A stretch of DNA of 63,829 bases, filler included, from Octopus bimaculoides (Eukaryota): NCBI RefSeq assembly GCF_001194135.2. It is 4 parts of 4 records of this genome, joined end to end, with 100 filler letters (N's around TTAATTAATTAA, not from the genome) between each part and the next. Parts side by side here need not be neighbours in the genome. Positions count along the whole stretch, not along the records: positions 14,333 to 31,580 come from NC_069010.1; 3 more parts are not named here. One strand, written 5' to 3'. This document shows positions 23,975 to 31,580 of this stretch, one piece after another (within the stretch, counting starts at the first letter, position 1; each line of letters opens with the position of its first letter). The position numbers and the translations under genes were made by a program. The notes under the pieces were generated by a model. That model did no database searches. It saw only the letters and a program-made list of their open reading frames with translations, and had not been told where the DNA came from.

Positions 23975-24415
23975 GGAATTGCGGAGCTTATCTAGACTGA
24001 GTAGACCATTAGTGATGGCCATAGGCAGGGCATTGATCCAGTGGCCAAAGAATTTTGTATGAGTAGAAGGTAGGCCACACCTTGGTCAGAATGATCAAGG
24101 AGAGAGTTGGAAGTGGTGCCTGAATGTCCCATACTCTTTGATTCCGTCTATCCTCAACTGAGGCAGAGCTTCATCCATCTCTCTCTTGGAACTTGTCCAA
24201 GCTGGAGAGGAAAGGATGTTACCTACTAAATGGGAGTAAGTGTGATAGAAGAAATAAAACAAGGAAGAGATAGAGACAAGCACTTGCATAGACCTAGGTC
24301 CCCAGACTGTTTGGACAAAGCAGCCTGATCAGAGGACTCTGCCGAGAGTTTGACATTGGCCAAGCTTTCGAGGTTCCTGAAGATTAGGCGATCAAAGCAT
24401 TGGAAGATGACAAGA
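23975..24415 (-). mobile_element. CRE-clade-like non-LTR retrotransposon fragment (RT thumb / downstream region)
   Basis: QAALSKQSGDLGLC (cf. QA.LP...GGLG) and GHWINALPMA..NGLLSLD (cf. G.WL.ALP...GL.L). Confidence 0.5.
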
Positions 24416-24419
24416 ATCT

Positions 24420-24523
24420 ATTTGGCACTCCGTCGCTTCCGACGTCGAGGGTTCCAGTTGATCCGATCAACGGAACAGCCTGCTGCTCGTGAAGTTAACG
24501 TGCAAGTGGCTGAGCACTCCACA
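24420..24523 (-). mobile_element. SINE family C 3' end (runs into gap)
   Basis: ttggcactccgtcgctt.cgacgtcgagggttccagttgatc matches 41630-41730. Confidence 0.85.
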
Positions 24524-26091
24524 NNNNNNNNNNNNNNNNNNNNNNNNNNNNNNNNNNNNNNNNNNNNNNNNNNNNNNNNNNNNNNNNNNNNNNNNNNNNN
24601 NNNNNNNNNNNNNNNNNNNNNNNNNNNNNNNNNNNNNNNNNNNNNNNNNNNNNNNNNNNNNNNNNNNNNNNNNNNNNNNNNNNNNNNNNNNNNNNNNNNN
24701 NNNNNNNNNNNNNNNNNNNNNNNNNNNNNNNNNNNNNNNNNNNNNNNNNNNNNNNNNNNNNNNNNNNNNNNNNNNNNNNNNNNNNNNNNNNNNNNNNNNN
24801 NNNNNNNNNNNNNNNNNNNNNNNNNNNNNNNNNNNNNNNNNNNNNNNNNNNNNNNNNNNNNNNNNNNNNNNNNNNNNNNNNNNNNNNNNNNNNNNNNNNN
24901 NNNNNNNNNNNNNNNNNNNNNNNNNNNNNNNNNNNNNNNNNNNNNNNNNNNNNNNNNNNNNNNNNNNNNNNNNNNNNNNNNNNNNNNNNNNNNNNNNNNN
25001 NNNNNNNNNNNNNNNNNNNNNNNNNNNNNNNNNNNNNNNNNNNNNNNNNNNNNNNNNNNNNNNNNNNNNNNNNNNNNNNNNNNNNNNNNNNNNNNNNNNN
25101 NNNNNNNNNNNNNNNNNNNNNNNNNNNNNNNNNNNNNNNNNNNNNNNNNNNNNNNNNNNNNNNNNNNNNNNNNNNNNNNNNNNNNNNNNNNNNNNNNNNN
25201 NNNNNNNNNNNNNNNNNNNNNNNNNNNNNNNNNNNNNNNNNNNNNNNNNNNNNNNNNNNNNNNNNNNNNNNNNNNNNNNNNNNNNNNNNNNNNNNNNNNN
25301 NNNNNNNNNNNNNNNNNNNNNNNNNNNNNNNNNNNNNNTTTTTTTTTTTTTTTTGCATGCCTCTTGGTTAATTCTGGGGGCGAAAGTCTAGAATTGATCG
25401 CCAACATAGGTTGGGATTTTCTCCGTTTTTGACAGGAGGAGAAGGGGTCAGATTTTCCATTCACCACGCATTTCTAAATGACGGGAGGGGAAACTTTATG
25501 AAAATGGGGAAAAAATAAATTTTAAAAAACTGAAATCCATAAAAATCCATAATTTTTGGCGAAACCATGAAGGCGATCTTTCGATCGCTTTCATGGTTTT
25601 TTTCGGTAAATATTTCGTAAGAGACCCCCGTTAAGTTACGGAGACGTAAACACAACAACAGCGGTTGTCAAGCGGTGACGGGCAGCACACACGCACATAG
25701 ATATATATACGACGTGTTTCTTTCAGTTTCTGCACCGTTTAACTTAATTCATCTTTAGCAAGTCTCAGTTATCTCCCTTAGTATTTGATCATCGTAAAAT
25801 ACCGCTAGAAATAGCAGTCAAATCCATGTGACATGGTACAGGTTATTGGACGAAATACTTAGTGCTATTTCGTCTGCCGCTACGTTCTGAGTTCAATACT
25901 TAATCCCTTTGTCTGTCCCCTCTATGTTTAGCCCCTTGTGGGCAATAAAGAGATAAGAAATAGCAGTCAAATCTCCCTCAAATTGCATTATGAAATATTT
26001 CTACTTGTAATAAATAGATTACAACTTCTTTAATACTACTTTCTGTTAAGCATTTTTTTAAATTTTGTTTTTTGTTCCCCCGTCCCCTCAG

Positions 26092-26200
26092 GACCTGAAG
26101 TCTTCACAACGACCCTGAACAAAGTGAGAAGAGAAAAATGGGTCCCTCTCAACGCCAAACAAAAGGAATATATATCGGATGTGATGAATTCAGGTATCAG
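26092..26200 (+). CDS. CENPQ: CENP-Q-like gene, internal exon (phase 1 to 2): PEVFTTTLNKVRREKWVPLNAKQKEYISDVMNSGI
   Basis: Acceptor ttttgttcccccgtcccctcAG, donor AG|GTAAGT; KWVPL...EYISDVMNSGI vs human CENP-Q TWQPL...DHLQTMMESVI (recalled). Confidence 0.7.
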
Positions 26201-26399
26201 GTAAGTTGTTGTCGTTTATTATTTAATCCTGGGTTAGTCTCGTTGAGGAAGTCTATGAATATCCAGGTAAGAAAATGGCGGTAGATGAACGATTTGTAAC
26301 AGCCGTGCAAGCAATGCACAGAGGTGAGTTTGGCATTCAGGTATCTCAGGTAGGTTGACGGAGAAGGGCTTCGTATGAAATACACACTGGAGTAGTTGT

Positions 26400-26690
26400 A
26401 ACATCATCATCATCATCATCATCATTTTGCATCTGCTTTCCATGCTGGCATGGGTTGGACAGAATTTGTCTGAAACTGTTAAGCTGCACCAGATGCCCTT
26501 CCTAATGCCGACCACTCCGAGAGCGTAACGAGTGCTTGCTTTTGTGTGTCACTGGCACAGGTGCCATTTGCGTGACACCAGTATTTGCCACAACTACGAC
26601 GGATCTTCTCAAGCACAGCATATTGCCAAAGGACTCGATCGCTTGTCGTTGCTTTCATGAGGCCCCCGAAAATTGTTTCCTGTTCTTTCA
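26400..26690 (-). mobile_element. RTE LINE 3' end with (GAT)n tail
   Basis: (CAT)n then tttccatgctggcatgggttggac...gatgcccttcctaatgcc. Confidence 0.75.
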
Positions 26691-26819
26691 GGTATGCATG
26701 CGTGTGTGTGTGTGTGTAGACATACATGCATGCATTCAATATTTGTACCTGTGTTTGTAGGTGCATTAGATTACGTACCAACAAATCTGCACAAAAACTT
26801 AGCACCACTTAGCTAATTT

Positions 26820-27150
26820 TTGGGGAAGGGGCCAATCAATTAGATTGACCTCAGTACGCAACTGGTACTTAATTTATCGACCCCGAAAGGATGAAAGGCA
26901 AAGTCAACCTCGGTGGAATTTGAACTCAGAATGTAAAGACAGACGAAATACTTATTTCTTTATTGCCCACAAGGGGCTAAACATAGAGGGGACAAACAGG
27001 GACAGACAAAGGGATTAAGTCGATTACATCGACTCCAGTATGTAACTGGTTCTTAATTTATCGACCCCGAAAGGATGAAAGGCAAAGTCGACCTCAGTGG
27101 AATTTGAACTCAGAACGTAAAGACAGATGAAATAGCGCTAAGCATTTCGA
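26820..27150 (-). mobile_element. Two nested or tandem SINE family A copies with different 3' tails
   Basis: atcgaccccgaaaggatgaaaggcaaagtc...gaatttgaactcagaa occurs twice. Confidence 0.85.
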
Positions 27151-27462
27151 CCAATCTATTAGTGGCACAGTGAAGATTTGTATGGCATTCCAAAGATTCT
27201 CCAACTCAACCACATATTTTCAAACACTGGGAAATCTGAACTGAAGAAGGCTTTTTGCTGTCTTCGCAACCAGGAAGAACTCTTTCAGGAAGAACTTGTC
27301 TAAAACTCAAAGAAAAAGCATACATACATACAGACAAATATACATACATACATACATGCATACATACTGTTATGCATACATACAGATATACATGCATACA
27401 TACTGATATACAAACATACAGATATACATACATATATAATTGTGTATATTCTTTTGTTGTAG

Positions 27463-27540
27463 TTTTGCTACATCAACTTTACCCAATTCCTCTGAAGAAA
27501 TCAGCAGTTTGGACTCTTTCCTGCATGCTGTGAAGAACAA
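27463..27540 (+). CDS. CENPQ: CENP-Q-like gene, internal exon (phase 2 to 2): FATSTLPNSSEEISSLDSFLHAVKN
   Basis: Acceptor ttcttttgttgtAG, donor AA|GTAAGA; EEISSLDSFL vs human EEIQYHLNFL. Confidence 0.7.
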
Positions 27541-27809
27541 GTAAGAACCCACGTTTATTATTGTTGTTGTTGTTGCTCTGATGTTTATGATGTTGTTTTC
27601 ATGCGGTTGTCACATGTAAACATACTGTGAAGTTATAAGTAAATATATACATGTAATGAATAGGGGTTTCGTCACTAACCAGCTGCAAAATCTAATGATT
27701 GTTGCTTCTGGTGGGATCCTATAGAAGTGCATGAGGACCCTAAACATAGACAACCTTGCTTGAACTTGTGTCTCAGGGTATTTTAGTTGCTCGTCTTCGT
27801 CTCTGTGTG

Positions 27810-27910
27810 TGTGTGTGTGTGTTTTTACAAAATTACTGGGAAACGGCTGAATGGATTTTCACCAAATTTGGCATTAGTGGCTCAAGATCATTAAATTTTG
27901 GTTTGGTTAT
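27810..27910. mobile_element. Helentron-associated (HINE/DINE-1-like) fragment
   Basis: (TG)n followed by aaacggctgaatggattttcaccaaatttggca. Confidence 0.5.
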
Positions 27911-27939
27911 CTTCAAAACTGGTGGATGGATGAATCAAT

Positions 27940-28300
27940 AAGTGGAGGCGCAATGGCCCAGTGGTTAGGGCAGCGGACTCGCGGTCGTAGGATCGTAGTT
28001 TCGATTCTCAGACCAGGCGTTGTGAGANNNNNNNNNNNNNNNNNNNNNNNNNNNNNNNNNNNNNNNNNNNNNNNNNNNNNNNNNNNNNNNNNNNNNNNNN
28101 NNNNNNNNNNNNNNNNNNNNNNNNNNNNNNNNNNNNNNNNNNNNNNNNNNNNNNNNNNNNNNNNNNNNNNNNNNNNNNNNNNNNNNNNNNNNNNNNNNNN
28201 NNNNNNNNNNNNNNNNNNNNNNNNNNNNNNNNNNNNNNNNNNNNNNNNNNNNNNNNNNNNNNNNNNNNNNNNNNNNNNNNNNNNNNAGTGCCAACACACA
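27940..28300 (+). mobile_element. SINE family C spanning a gap
   Basis: tRNA-like head AGTGGAGGCGCAATGGCCCAGTGGTTAGGGCAGCGGACTCGCGG...GTTTCGATTCTC; agtgccaac tail after the gap. Confidence 0.85.
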
Positions 28301-28461
28301 CAACACATATGCATAAACAATAAGCAGGGGAAATAAGTCTTCGTCTGGGAATATATTTATTTGATTAAATTTTATTTTGTCATATGTGCGCATAGAGTAT
28401 GCATCGTCCTTCCGATGCCCTTTTTTTTTTCTTCATTTCTTTCTTTCTTTCTTTCTTCCAG

Positions 28462-28534
28462 GTTGATGCAACAATTAGACCAAATCATTGTGCCTCCACT
28501 CAAATATTCTGGAATTGTTGATGTTGATAAACTT
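28462..28534 (+). CDS. CENPQ: CENP-Q-like gene, internal exon (phase 2 to 0): LMQQLDQIIVPPLKYSGIVDVDKL
   Basis: Long pyrimidine tract ttctttctttctttcttccAG, donor CTT|GTAAGT; KLMQQLDQIIVPPLK vs human RLLQQCETLKVPPKK. Confidence 0.75.
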
Positions 28535-28619
28535 GTAAGTACAACAGGAGCTGTTCCCTGGTGGACGTCGTTGTTGGGGATTCTCGGGGACCAATCCCGA
28601 TTCTCTTTTTATCTTTTAC

Positions 28620-29275
28620 TTGTTTAAAGTCATTGGACTGTGGTGGCCATGCTGGGGTACCACTTTTTTTTTTAAAGCTTGCTGCTAATTCTATTGCTAT
28701 CTTTTGCTGAACCACTAAGTTGTGTCAGATGTGAACAAACCAACACTGGTTGACAAGTGGTGGTGACACACACACACACACACAGATATTGAGAAGAGGA
28801 CCCACCAAGCCGAGCAAAATCGTTGAGAAGACCCATGTGCCAGTAGCATGCTGGTGGCACGTAGAAGCACCGGTTAAACTCTTGGAGTGGTTGGCATTAG
28901 GAAGGGCATCCATCCATAGAAAACCCTGCCAAACCAGACTGGAGTCTGGTGCAGCCTGCCAGCCATGTTCAAAACGTCCAACCCATACCAGCATGGACAA
29001 CGGACATTAAATGAAGATGATTTATACATACGCATCTATTTGAGTACTTAGTACACATATCTATTAGTTTGTGTCATCCTGATAAAGACTTTCCATATCT
29101 TTTACACACACACACACACACACATGACAGGCTTCTTTCAGTCTCCATTTCCCAAATCCACTCACAAGGCCCGGGGATGTAGTAGAAGACACTTGCTCAC
29201 GATACCGTGCAGTGGGAATGAACCCAGAATCATGTGGTCGGGAAGCAGCAAAGTTCTTACCACACAGCCATGCAG
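28620..29275. mobile_element. Fragmented SINE family B (minus) interrupted by an RTE 3' tail (plus, about 28790-29025)
   Basis: SINE-B 3' part at about 28620-28790, head at about 29120-29275; RTE tail aggaagggcatcc...cagcatggacaacggacattaaatgaagatgat. Confidence 0.7.
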
Positions 29276-29449
29276 CAGTGTCTATTCTGTTGATCTATAA
29301 TTCCCCATGGTGTCACTGGCACTTGGGTGCCAGTTTGATTGTGCCACTTACTCCTCATGTGTGCGTGTGTGTATTGCGATGTGGTTCTGTTGTGCACTGT
29401 GTTGTTTTTTGCAGAAGATTCTGACTTAAAAATATGTCTTTGTTTACAG

Positions 29450-29593
29450 GTAAACTTCAGCAACATAATCCAGGAGCTCGACGACAGGATCGAAACCTCG
29501 GATGGGGCGATCATCGAACAGGAAGAATTACTAGCAGAGAAGAAGCAAAGGCTGGAAAGTTTGAAGTTGACCAACAAATCTTCCCAGTTGTAG
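29450..29593 (+). CDS. CENPQ: CENP-Q-like gene, terminal exon (coiled coil): VNFSNIIQELDDRIETSDGAIIEQEELLAEKKQRLESLKLTNKSSQL*
   Basis: Acceptor tgtctttgtttacAG, phase 0 fits the previous exon, TAG at 29591-29593; IIQELDDRIET vs human LLQEEIDKMVET. Confidence 0.75.
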   Translation, partial: VNFSNIIQELDDRIETSDGAIIEQEELLAEKKQRLESLKLTNKSSQL

Positions 29594-29633
29594 TTTTTTT
29601 TAACTGTTGTCAATTAGTCTCAACTTGGCTCTG

Positions 29634-29653
29634 AATAAACAAGTCTGAATAAA
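29634..29653 (+). terminator. Tandem AATAAA polyadenylation signals of the CENP-Q-like gene
   Basis: AATAAA at 29634-29639 and 29648-29653, inside a 14-bp tandem duplication just after the stop. Confidence 0.6.
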
Positions 29654-30613
29654 TAAGTCTGTTGTCCGTGTTATGTTTTCTTTTGGTTCGGGTTGGGATA
29701 ATAAACAACTCACTGAAGGCATTATTATGATACTACGTGTTTATTTACTTGGCATGTTTACAAACAATATATATATATATATANNNNNNNNNNNNNNNNN
29801 NNNNNNNNNNNNNNNNNNNNNNNNNNNNNNNNNNNNNNNNNNNNNNNNNNNNNNNNNNNNNNNNNNNNNNNNNNNNNNNNNNNNNNNNNNNNNNNNNNNN
29901 NNNNNNNNNNNNNNNNNNNNNNNNNNNNNNNNNNNNNNNNNNNNNNNNNNNNNNNNNNNNNNNNNNNNNNNNNNNNNNNNNNNNNNNNNNNNNNNNNNNN
30001 NNNNNNNNNNNNNNNNNNNNNNNNNNNNNNNNNNNNNNNNNNNNNNNNNNNNNNNNNNNNNNNNNNNNNNNNNNNNNNNNNNNNNNNNNNNNNNNNNNNN
30101 NNNNNNNNNNNNNNNNNNNNNNNNNNNNNNNNNNNNNNNNNNNNNNNNNNNNNNNNNNNNNNNNNNNNNNNNNNNNNNNNNNNNNNNNNNNNNNNNNNNN
30201 NNNNNNNNNNNNNNNNNNNNNNNNNNNNNNNNNNNNNNNNNNNNNNNNNNNNNNNNNNNNNNNNNNNNNNNNNNNNNNNNNNNNNNNNNNNNNNNNNNNN
30301 NNNNNNNNNNNNNNNNNNNNNNNNNNNNNNNNNNNNNNNNNNNNNNNNNNNNNNNNNNNNNNNNNNNNNNNNNNNNNNNNNNNNNNNNNNNNNNNNNNNN
30401 NNNNNNNNNNNNNNNNNNNNNNNNNNNNNNNNNNNNNNNNNNNNNNNNNNNNNNNNNNNNNNNNNNNNNNNNNNNNNNNNNNNNNNNNNNNNNNNNNNNN
30501 NNNNNNNNNNNNNNNNNNNNNNNNNNNNNNNNNNNNNNNNNNNNNNNNNNNNNNNNNNNNNNNNNNNNNNNNNNNNNNNNNNNNNNNNNNNNNNNNNNNN
30601 NNNNNNNNNTATA

Positions 30614-31039: not shown

Positions 31040-31580
31040 AAATATATATCTTCTTGAGTGCCCTCGTCTCTTCCTGGTCAATAGGAGGTTGGATCTTAGT
31101 TGGCAGGGTGGTCTTATATTTCCTGCCATTCAGTATTTCTGCTGGGGATTTCATGTCAGCCCTCAGTGGTGTTGCTCGTAGGGACAAAAGAGCCAGGTGT
31201 GGGTCTTCCTTACTTTCTCGGCATTTGACTAGTGTTCTCTTGCACCTGTCTTTCAATGAATCCATGACCTTTGGGGTAGTGTGGAGATGAGGTTACAATG
31301 TTGAACCCATACTCATCAGCTAGCTTTCTGAATTCCTGAGATGTGAACTGGGTTCCATTGTCACATATGATCTGCTCTGGTATTCCTTGCTCTGCCACAA
31401 GTCCTCGAGCCACTGTAGTTATTGTTCTGGCTCTCAAGTCTTTCACTTTCCTCACAAATGGGAATTTGGAGTGGTAGCAGACCATTATCAAGTACCATTG
31501 TTGGTTCTCTTTGAACAGGTCTACTCCAATAGTTTGCCATGGCCTTCTTGGAATGTCACTGGATATCATTTCCTACTTTT
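31040..31580 (-). mobile_element. Gypsy/Ty3 integrase fragment (frameshifted)
   Basis: PWQTIGVDLF...GIPEQIICDNGTQFTSQEF...TSSPHYPKGHGFIER...LSLRATPL...SPAEILNGRK. Confidence 0.9.

What the first reader, a model, noticed from the sequence alone, without database searches (positions are those of the whole stretch)
26092..29593. Cryptic four-exon CENP-Q-like gene barely visible in the ORF track
Seen: four exons with canonical GT-AG sites and matching phases (1-2, 2-2, 2-0, 0-stop) give PEVFTTTLNKVRREKWVPLNAKQKEYISDVMNSGISFATSTLPNSSEEISSLDSFLHAVKNKLMQQLDQIIVPPLKYSGIVDVDKLVNFSNIIQELDDRIETSDGAIIEQEELLAEKKQRLESLKLTNKSSQL*. It lines up colinearly with recalled human CENP-Q motifs (W.PL, M.S.I, EEI...FL, L.QQ.....VPP.K, QE.D...ET). 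CENP-Q is fast-evolving and missing in flies and nematodes, so a cephalopod copy informs CCAN evolution.
Basis: partly seen in the sequence, partly recalled or inferred. Interest (0 to 1): 0.7.

Follow-up and report, generated by a model that had tools for sequence, protein, structure and literature searches.

The report
Octopus centromere protein Q gene
The four short exons are real and encode the Octopus bimaculoides version of centromere protein Q, a kinetochore subunit, but the gene is already in public databases and its first exon is lost in an assembly gap, so the finding is correct but ordinary.

Summary

The N gap at 28028-28286 lies inside an intron and inside a SINE. Both flanks are collinear with the fully sequenced O. 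vulgaris intron, so no coding sequence or frame is affected.

The CENP-Q reading is supported:
- The only significant matches among solved structures are human CENP-Q (E 5e-6 for the single sequence, 4.8e-10 for a cephalopod profile).
- hhalign against 18 mammalian CENP-Q sequences gives 96.6% probability (E 6e-10).
- A mammal-only HMM scores the peptide 30 bits, against at most 9.9 bits for 2000 shuffles.
- Pfam PF13094 does not hit. It models human residues 116-266, whereas the conserved block is human 69-143.

The gene is not cryptic. The same model exists as UniParc UPI0006952477 and RefSeq XP_014788348.1 (named "uncharacterized"), and the O. vulgaris orthologue is named "Centromere protein Q" in UniRef.

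The gene has five coding exons. Exon 1, a basic tail of about 92 aa, is absent from the readable sequence and most likely sits in gap 24524-25338.

Cephalopod CENP-Q ends about 80 aa earlier than the human protein.

The parts
24524..25338 (+). Assembly gap (815 N, length estimated) that most likely hides coding exon 1 (about 277 nt, basic N-terminal tail of about 92 aa) and the promoter
   Evidence: O. vulgaris exon 1 (L001 10001-10277) and O. sinensis exon 1 (L002 4572-4847) have no match in the readable window by tblastn or by blastn with word size 7. In both species the anchor that matches window 25357-25515 lies about 600 nt 3' of exon 1. The upstream anchor L001 1-499 matches window 22038-22586. 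The placement is an inference.
26092..26200 (+). Encodes (G)PEVFTTTLNKVRREKWVPLNAKQKEYISDVMNSGI(S).
   Evidence: AG|GACCTG ... TATCAG|GTAAGT. 94.5% identical to L001 18730-18838 with the same borders. This is the best ORF hit of a mammalian CENP-Q HMM in the window, at HMM positions 68-93.
27463..27540 (+). Coding exon 3, 78 nt
   Evidence: Splice sites. 97% identical to L001 19752-19829. The junction is used in RefSeq XP_014788348.1.
27944..28292 (+). Intronic tRNA-derived SINE interrupted by the N gap at 28028-28286 (head 27944-28027, apparent last 6 nt 28287-28292). Not coding.
   Evidence: The head is 92% identical to L001 19981-20067, and AGTGCC after the gap matches the last bases of the SINE tail. 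O. vulgaris has no insertion at this spot, with only 28 nt between the flanking anchors. ARAGORN calls no tRNA gene.
28462..28534 (+). Coding exon 4, 73 nt. Encodes LMQQLDQIIVPPLKYSGIVDVDKL with the invariant VPP motif.
   Evidence: Splice sites. 94.5% identical to L001 22989-23061. It hits mammalian CENP-Q HMM positions 114-144.
29450..29593 (+). Coding exon 5 (last), 144 nt, coiled-coil helix, stop TAG at 29591-29593
   Evidence: The stop is at the same codon in O. vulgaris and O. sinensis. AF2 predicts one long helix over residues 83-132.
29634..29653 (+). Two AATAAA polyadenylation signals (29634-29639 and 29648-29653), 41-60 nt after the stop
   Evidence: Their function is inferred.

Best explanation
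The window is Octopus bimaculoides genomic DNA, and this locus is the octopus orthologue of CENPQ (centromere protein Q; Okp1 in yeast). It is an ordinary five-coding-exon gene on the + strand.

Shown here:
- Exons 2-5 are intact.
- They encode a helical hairpin with the motif (K/R)R.KW.PL ... L(M/L)QQ ... VPP, which is homologous to human CENP-Q residues 69-143, followed by one long C-terminal helix.
- Exon 1 is absent from the readable sequence.

Inferred from the orthologues: exon 1 encodes a disordered, strongly basic tail of about 92 aa and lies in the assembly gap at 24524-25338.

Inferred from the human and yeast proteins:
- The protein pairs with CENP-U through the hairpin and the coiled coil.
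- The coiled coil forms the CENP-OPQU pillar of the CCAN.
- The basic tail contacts microtubules or DNA.

Cephalopod CENP-Q is about 80 aa shorter after the VPP motif than the mammalian protein. It has no counterpart of the C-terminal helices that hold CENP-R in humans.
For: Exons, phases and peptide.

Species and existing models:
- XP_014788348.1 [O. bimaculoides] is 100% identical over 103 aa.
- O. vulgaris CAI9744469.1 / A0AA36FPJ4 (225 aa, 87% identical) is named Centromere protein Q in UniRef.

Conserved exon lengths and splice sites, and dN/dS of about 0.5.

Homology to CENP-Q:
- phmmer against PDB, E 5e-6.
- Cephalopod profile against PDB, E 4.8e-10, CENP-Q only.
- hhalign, 96.6% probability, E 6.3e-10 over 107 columns.
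- Mammal-only HMM, 30.3 bits against at most 9.9 bits for 2000 shuffles.
- In a six-frame scan of the three loci, that HMM's best hits are exons 2 and 4, in the right order.
- The top three Foldseek hits for the AF2 model are CENP-Q chains 7qoo_Q, 7r5v_Q and 7pkn_Q (E 6e-3 to 0.1); the next hit has E 1.8.

Basic tail: O. vulgaris exon 1 has pI 11.1 and the human tail (residues 1-67) has pI 10.4. The human tail binds microtubules (PMC6162344).

A 32%-identical relative (P0005, 214 aa) is encoded without introns on 1.5-1.9 kb contigs from 8 sequencing runs. It has the same architecture and the same early end.

Roles of the human domains: PMC9235857.
Against: - Pfam PF13094 (CENP-Q) gives no hit at E<=10 for the window peptide or for any cephalopod orthologue.
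- There is no counterpart of human residues ~205-268. A C-terminal HMM finds nothing downstream in the window or in 10 kb of O. vulgaris sequence.
- No expression data for O. bimaculoides were available here.
- The partners CENP-U, CENP-O and CENP-P were not looked for in the octopus genome.
- The AF2 alignment contained mammalian CENP-Q sequences, so the Foldseek result is not independent.
- No bridging invertebrate homologues were recovered. A search of 1.8 billion representative proteins gave only cephalopod-like hits.
Confidence: 0.85

Rival explanations
1. It is a CENP-Q-derived gene that has lost its CCAN function. It could be a truncated paralogue with another role, or a slowly decaying copy, given the missing C-terminal third and the relaxed constraint.
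For: The protein is about 80 aa shorter after VPP than mammalian CENP-Q. dN/dS is about 0.5. The RefSeq models in two species are truncated, and O. sinensis exon 1 carries an in-frame stop.
Against: The reading frame, the four exon lengths and the stop position are kept in three Octopus species, and the splice sites were read and match in O. vulgaris. A relative only 32% identical keeps the same architecture and is found on intronless mRNA-like contigs in 8 runs. The truncated RefSeq models are explained by an assembly gap in O. bimaculoides and by a probable assembly error in O. sinensis. The searches found no second CENP-Q-like protein in Octopus.
Confidence: 0.07
2. The gene model is also incomplete at its 3' end. 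Further exons that encode the missing CENP-Q C-terminus would be reached by an alternative donor upstream of the TAG.
For: The human protein continues for about 65 more residues. The N gap at 29784-30609 lies 190 nt downstream of the stop.
Against: The stop is at the same codon in three Octopus species, in models made by at least two annotation efforts. The P0005 mRNA contigs end the ORF at the equivalent place and continue with 0.7-1 kb of 3' sequence. AATAAA signals lie 41-60 nt after the stop. A C-terminal CENP-Q HMM finds nothing in 10 kb of gap-poor O. vulgaris downstream sequence.
Confidence: 0.04
3. The resemblance to CENP-Q is a chance or compositional match of a generic helical, coiled-coil protein.
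For: There is no Pfam CENP-Q hit. Identity to human is only about 25%. Weak alpha-catenin and Prominin matches also appear.
Against: The matched block is mostly outside the coiled coil, and the bias score is only 0.2-0.5 bits. E-values improve from 5e-6 to 5e-10 when a profile is used. The reciprocal, mammal-only HMM scores 30 bits against at most 9.9 bits for 2000 shuffles. The other matches have E>=0.04.
Confidence: 0.03

Closest known systems
Human CENP-Q (UniProt Q7L2Z9; chains 7pkn_Q, 7qoo_Q, 7r5s, 7xho)
   Same: Both have a basic disordered N-terminal tail, seen in the octopus orthologue. Both have the motif KRK.W.PL, two helices ending in L(L/M)QQ ... VPP.K, and then a long helix. Identity is about 25-29% over 84-107 aligned residues.
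   Different: The octopus protein is 225 aa and the human protein is 268 aa. The octopus tail is longer (92 aa against 67 aa). After VPP the octopus protein has 59 aa and the human protein 140 aa. The alignment has an apparent deletion of about 29 aa in the coiled coil (human ~143-171). There is no counterpart of human ~205-268, which includes the short C-terminal helices against which CENP-R packs (PMC9235857).
Pfam PF13094 (CENP-Q, a CENPA-CAD centromere complex subunit) / yeast Okp1
   Same: Same protein family by descent. Human CENP-Q hits the model at E 5e-32.
   Different: The model covers human residues 116-266 only. The cephalopod proteins share just the first ~30-75 positions and score below the reporting threshold. 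Okp1 itself was not compared here.
Existing cephalopod gene models: XP_014788348.1 (O. bimaculoides), UPI0006952477, XP_029653101.1 (O. sinensis), CAI9744469.1 / A0AA36FPJ4 (O. vulgaris, 'Centromere protein Q')
   Different: The two RefSeq entries start at the internal Met (103 aa) and are named 'uncharacterized'. Only the O. vulgaris model is full length (225 aa).

Membership tests
CENP-Q / Okp1 (CCAN subunit) | Statistically significant sequence homology to an experimentally established CENP-Q | tested here: met
   Against human CENP-Q: phmmer E 5e-6 and cephalopod profile E 4.8e-10 with no other hit. hhalign against 18 mammalian sequences gives 96.6% probability and E 6.3e-10. The reciprocal mammalian HMM scores 30.3 bits, against at most 9.9 bits for shuffles.
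CENP-Q / Okp1 (CCAN subunit) | Match to Pfam PF13094 above its gathering score (28.5 bits) | tested here: not met
   No hit at E<=10 for the window peptide, P0001, P0002, P0003 or P0005. The model spans human residues 116-266, so it lies mostly outside the conserved block, and its C-terminal half has no cephalopod counterpart. This is an operational test of one model, not of descent.
CENP-Q / Okp1 (CCAN subunit) | Architecture: basic disordered N-terminal tail, then helical hairpin, then C-terminal coiled coil | tested here: met
   The AF2 model of the window peptide has helices at 21-40, 46-67 and 83-132. The tail is seen only in the orthologues (O. vulgaris exon 1 pI 11.1, P0005 pI 11.1, human pI 10.4), because in this window it falls in a gap.
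CENP-Q / Okp1 (CCAN subunit) | C-terminal helices (human ~205-268) that pack with the CENP-U C-terminus and CENP-R | tested here: not met
   The ORF stops about 59 aa after VPP in all three octopuses, and about 49 aa after it in P0005. No C-terminal HMM hit was found downstream.
CENP-Q / Okp1 (CCAN subunit) | Fold similarity to CENP-Q in solved CCAN structures | tested here: inconclusive
   The top three Foldseek hits are CENP-Q chains (E 6e-3, TM 0.46/0.31), and the next hit has E 1.8. However, the model's pLDDT is 75, the alignment used to build it contained mammalian CENP-Q, and the RMSD is high.
CENP-Q / Okp1 (CCAN subunit) | Heterodimer with CENP-U and assembly into CENP-OPQU(R) at centromeres | not testable with these tools
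   This needs AlphaFold-Multimer with octopus CENP-U, pull-downs and localisation.
CENP-Q / Okp1 (CCAN subunit) | Co-occurrence with the other CCAN genes (CENP-O, CENP-P, CENP-U and others) in the same genome | not tested
According to PMC5579357 the CCAN behaves as an evolutionary unit, so partner genes are expected.
CENP-Q / Okp1 (CCAN subunit) | Intron positions and phases shared with vertebrate CENPQ | not tested

The most novel reading that the evidence does not exclude
Cephalopod CENP-Q may be a naturally minimal CENP-Q. It keeps the basic tail and the N-terminal CENP-QU 'foot' hairpin (KRK.W.PL ... VPP), which would then be the ancestrally constrained part of the protein that Pfam's model omits. 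It has a much shorter coiled coil and lacks the CENP-R-binding C-terminal helices. This would imply a shorter pillar 1 and a CCAN without CENP-R in cephalopods, in line with CENP-R being a recent animal invention (PMC5579357).
Probability: 0.35. Interest if true: 0.35.

Novelty: already known. Interest (0 to 1): 0.15.

Why it matters
There is little new biology here. A CCAN subunit in a mollusc is expected, because the CCAN is ancestral in animals and was lost only in some lineages such as flies and nematodes (PMC5579357).

The practical value is in annotation:
- Two RefSeq entries (O. bimaculoides XP_014788348.1 and O. sinensis XP_029653101.1) are 5'-truncated and named 'uncharacterized'. They can be renamed CENP-Q and completed.
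- The cause of the truncation is identified in each case: an assembly gap in O. bimaculoides and an in-frame stop in exon 1 in O. sinensis.
- The Pfam CENP-Q model misses the best-conserved segment of the protein. This helps explain why divergent CENP-Q proteins go unrecognised.
- The short C-terminus of the cephalopod protein is a small, testable pointer for work on CCAN evolution.

Tried and rejected
- Pfam scans of the peptide and of all cephalopod orthologues found no CENP-Q hit, only sub-threshold noise (Prominin, SlyX, ArsC, Alg14).
- An exhaustive HMMER search of 1.84 billion representatives with the octopus profile gave only 3 hits. One of them, P0004 (1448 aa), is a spurious tandem-repeat protein. 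No bridging invertebrate CENP-Q was found.
- A joint human plus cephalopod profile search returned 193 hits, and the 120 listed were all mammalian. These served only as an independent mammalian profile.
- tblastn and blastn (word size 7) searches for exon 1 in the readable window found nothing.
- An HMM of the human C-terminus, run against six-frame ORFs downstream in the window and in the O. vulgaris and O. sinensis loci, found nothing.
- ARAGORN on the tRNA-like SINE head called no tRNA.
- A literature search for CENP-Q in cephalopods or molluscs listed no relevant paper. The main text of van Hooff et al. 2017 does not mention these taxa.
- I considered a hidden exon in the 28028-28286 gap and rejected it on collinearity and SINE content.
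Full report
**Observation.** I read 25800-29900 and spliced the four proposed exons.
- The exons are 26092-26200 (109 nt), 27463-27540 (78 nt), 28462-28534 (73 nt) and 29450-29593 (144 nt).
- Each is preceded by a polypyrimidine tract and AG. The first three are followed by GTAAGT or GTAAGA.
- AATAAA signals follow at 29634-29639 and 29648-29653.

**The flagged gap (28028-28286).** It lies in the intron between the second and third of these exons.
- blastn against the orthologous O. vulgaris locus (L001, fetched) shows that both flanks are collinear and on the same strand. Window 27774-27938 matches L001 22675-22856, and window 28346-28658 matches L001 22884-23182.
- In O. vulgaris only 28 nt separate those anchors. 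The additional window sequence is a tRNA-derived SINE.
- The SINE head (27944-28027) is 92% identical to a complete copy of about 395 nt at L001 19981-20375. What appear to be its last six bases (AGTGCC) resume immediately after the Ns.
- The gap therefore hides about 300 nt of SINE body, not coding sequence. The orthologous proteins align across the exon junction with no residue missing.

**Is it a gene?** Yes, and it is already a public one.
- A search of the 5.8-billion-protein collection returned XP_014788348.1, 'uncharacterized protein LOC106882251 [Octopus bimaculoides]'. It is 103 aa and 100% identical to the last 103 residues of the peptide, starting at the internal Met.
- O. sinensis XP_029653101.1 is 103 aa. 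O. vulgaris CAI9744469.1 / A0AA36FPJ4 is 225 aa, 87% identical, and UniRef names it 'Centromere protein Q'.
- The window is therefore O. bimaculoides DNA.
- In O. vulgaris and O. sinensis the four exons have the same lengths. In O. vulgaris the AG/GT borders were read directly and lie at the same positions.
- Exon identity to O. vulgaris is 87-97%. The Nei-Gojobori estimate is dN 0.074 and dS 0.141, a ratio of about 0.5. The gene is fast-evolving but constrained, though the counts are small.

**The missing first exon.**
- The O. vulgaris protein has 92 further N-terminal residues, encoded by one exon (L001 10001-10277) that ends ...AGTG|GT. That phase fits the acceptor at 26092.
- Neither tblastn (E<=10) nor blastn with 7-nt words finds this exon, or the ~290 nt upstream of it, anywhere in the readable window.
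- The nearest unique anchors bracket the 815-N gap at 24524-25338. L001 1-499 matches window 22038-22586. L001 10885-11038, about 600 nt 3' of exon 1, matches window 25357-25515, which starts 19 nt after the gap. The same holds for O. sinensis.
- The left edge of that gap is again a truncated SINE copy.
- I infer that exon 1 and the promoter lie in this gap. This explains why RefSeq starts the protein at an internal Met.
- In O. sinensis exon 1 is present (L002 4572-4847) but carries an in-frame stop. That is probably an assembly error, and it explains the equally truncated RefSeq model there.

**What is it?**
- phmmer of the 133-aa peptide against all PDB chain sequences gives human CENP-Q as the top three hits (E 5e-6 to 8e-6). 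Query residues 12-96 align to human 69-150, including RxKW.PL, M.S.I, L.QQ and VPP.K. The next hits are alpha-catenins at E>=0.05.
- A profile of four cephalopod sequences hits only CENP-Q, at E 4.8e-10.
- I verified my copy of the human sequence as identical to 7pkn_Q over residues 1-268.
- Profile-profile comparison of the cephalopod alignment with 18 mammalian CENP-Q sequences gives 96.6% probability and E 6.3e-10 over 107 columns.
- Reciprocally, an HMM built from the mammals alone scores the window peptide 30.3 bits and O. vulgaris 34.1 bits. The best of 2000 shuffles scores 9.9 bits.
- In a six-frame scan of the three loci, that HMM's best hits are the ORFs containing exons 2 and 4, in the correct model order.
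- An AF2 model (pLDDT 75) shows a helical hairpin (21-40, 46-67) and a long helix (83-132).
- Its three best Foldseek matches in the PDB are CENP-Q chains (E 6e-3 to 0.1), and the next match has E 1.8. This last result is not independent, because mammalian sequences were in the alignment.

**Why Pfam fails.**
- PF13094 gave no hit at E<=10 for any cephalopod sequence.
- On human CENP-Q, however, the model covers only residues 116-266. The block conserved between octopus and human is 69-143, and the cephalopod proteins have nothing to align to the model's C-terminal half.
- The failure therefore reflects the model's boundaries and a real shortening of the protein, not a lack of homology.

**Anatomy and likely mechanism.** The following is shown.
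- The protein has the hairpin plus one long helix.
- It has 59 residues after VPP, against 140 in human.
- The stop codon is at the same position in three Octopus species.
- P0005 (214 aa, 32% identical) has the same architecture. It is encoded without introns on 1.5-1.9 kb contigs from eight sequencing runs, so it comes from mRNA, in an organism I could not identify but take to be another cephalopod.
- hhalign and MAFFT place a gap of about 29 aa opposite human ~143-171, and nothing opposite human ~205-268. The register within the coiled coil is uncertain.

The following is inferred from the human proteins.
- The human N-terminal tail (1-67) is basic, disordered and binds microtubules (PMC6162344). 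The O. vulgaris tail has pI 11.1, against 10.4 for human.
[quoted passage not shown] CENP-R packs on a short helix pair at the C-terminus of CENP-QU (PMC9235857).
- By analogy, the octopus protein should pair with CENP-U in the CENP-OPQU pillar, but without the CENP-R docking helices. CENP-R is reported to be a recent animal invention (PMC5579357).

**Novelty and verdict.**
- The CCAN is ancestral in animals and was lost in particular lineages such as Drosophila and C. elegans (PMC5579357). A molluscan CENP-Q is therefore expected.
- The gene model is public, and the sister-species orthologue already carries the name.
- What this analysis adds is annotation-level. It links the two 'uncharacterized' truncated RefSeq entries to CENP-Q, explains why they are truncated, places exon 1 in a gap, clears the flagged gap, and documents the short C-terminus and the Pfam blind spot.
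- Interest is low.

Noticed in passing
window 14585-19819 (+): One uninterrupted open frame of at least 1745 aa runs into the N gap at 19820-20587. It has five C2H2 zinc fingers near the C-terminal end (aa 1352-1723), four RGRP AT-hook-like cores (aa 693-836) and long homopolymer runs (E, S, N, T, H). It is a large zinc-finger gene immediately upstream of CENPQ on the same strand.
   Followed up: partly
window 31210-31569 (-): A 119-aa ORF matches the Pfam integrase core domain (rve, E 2.8e-12). It is a retroelement remnant at the edge of the piece.
   Followed up: partly
window 27944-28027 and 24400-24523 (reverse); L001 19981-20375: This is a tRNA-derived SINE family of about 395 nt. Truncated copies abut both assembly gaps (28028 and 24524), which suggests that these repeats caused the gaps. 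ARAGORN does not call the head as a tRNA.
   Followed up: partly
window 26836-27152; L001 12497-13720: A 176-nt element is present as two adjacent copies in the window, in the intron after exon 26092-26200. In intron 1 of the O. vulgaris gene it forms a 6.9-copy tandem array with 95% matches. So a SINE-like unit has been amplified in tandem in one species.
   Followed up: partly
L002 4572-4847 (O. sinensis): Exon 1 of the O. sinensis orthologue contains an in-frame stop (RPPE*EPNN against RPRNENQNN in O. vulgaris). This is probably an indel error in the assembly, and it explains the 103-aa truncated RefSeq model XP_029653101.1.
   Followed up: partly
L001 against window, introns: The O. vulgaris introns are much longer than those in the window: about 0.9, 3.2 and 4.9 kb against 1.26, 0.92 and 0.92 kb. 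Intron 1 is 8.4 kb in O. vulgaris. The difference is almost all SINE and repeat insertions. Some of it may reflect repeats collapsed in the gapped O. bimaculoides assembly.
   Followed up: no
window 21128-21600, 29102-29270, 28847-29021: Further dispersed repeat families have many copies in the O. vulgaris locus (75-92% identity). They are often flanked by (CA)n, (TA)n or (ACAT)n microsatellites.
   Followed up: no
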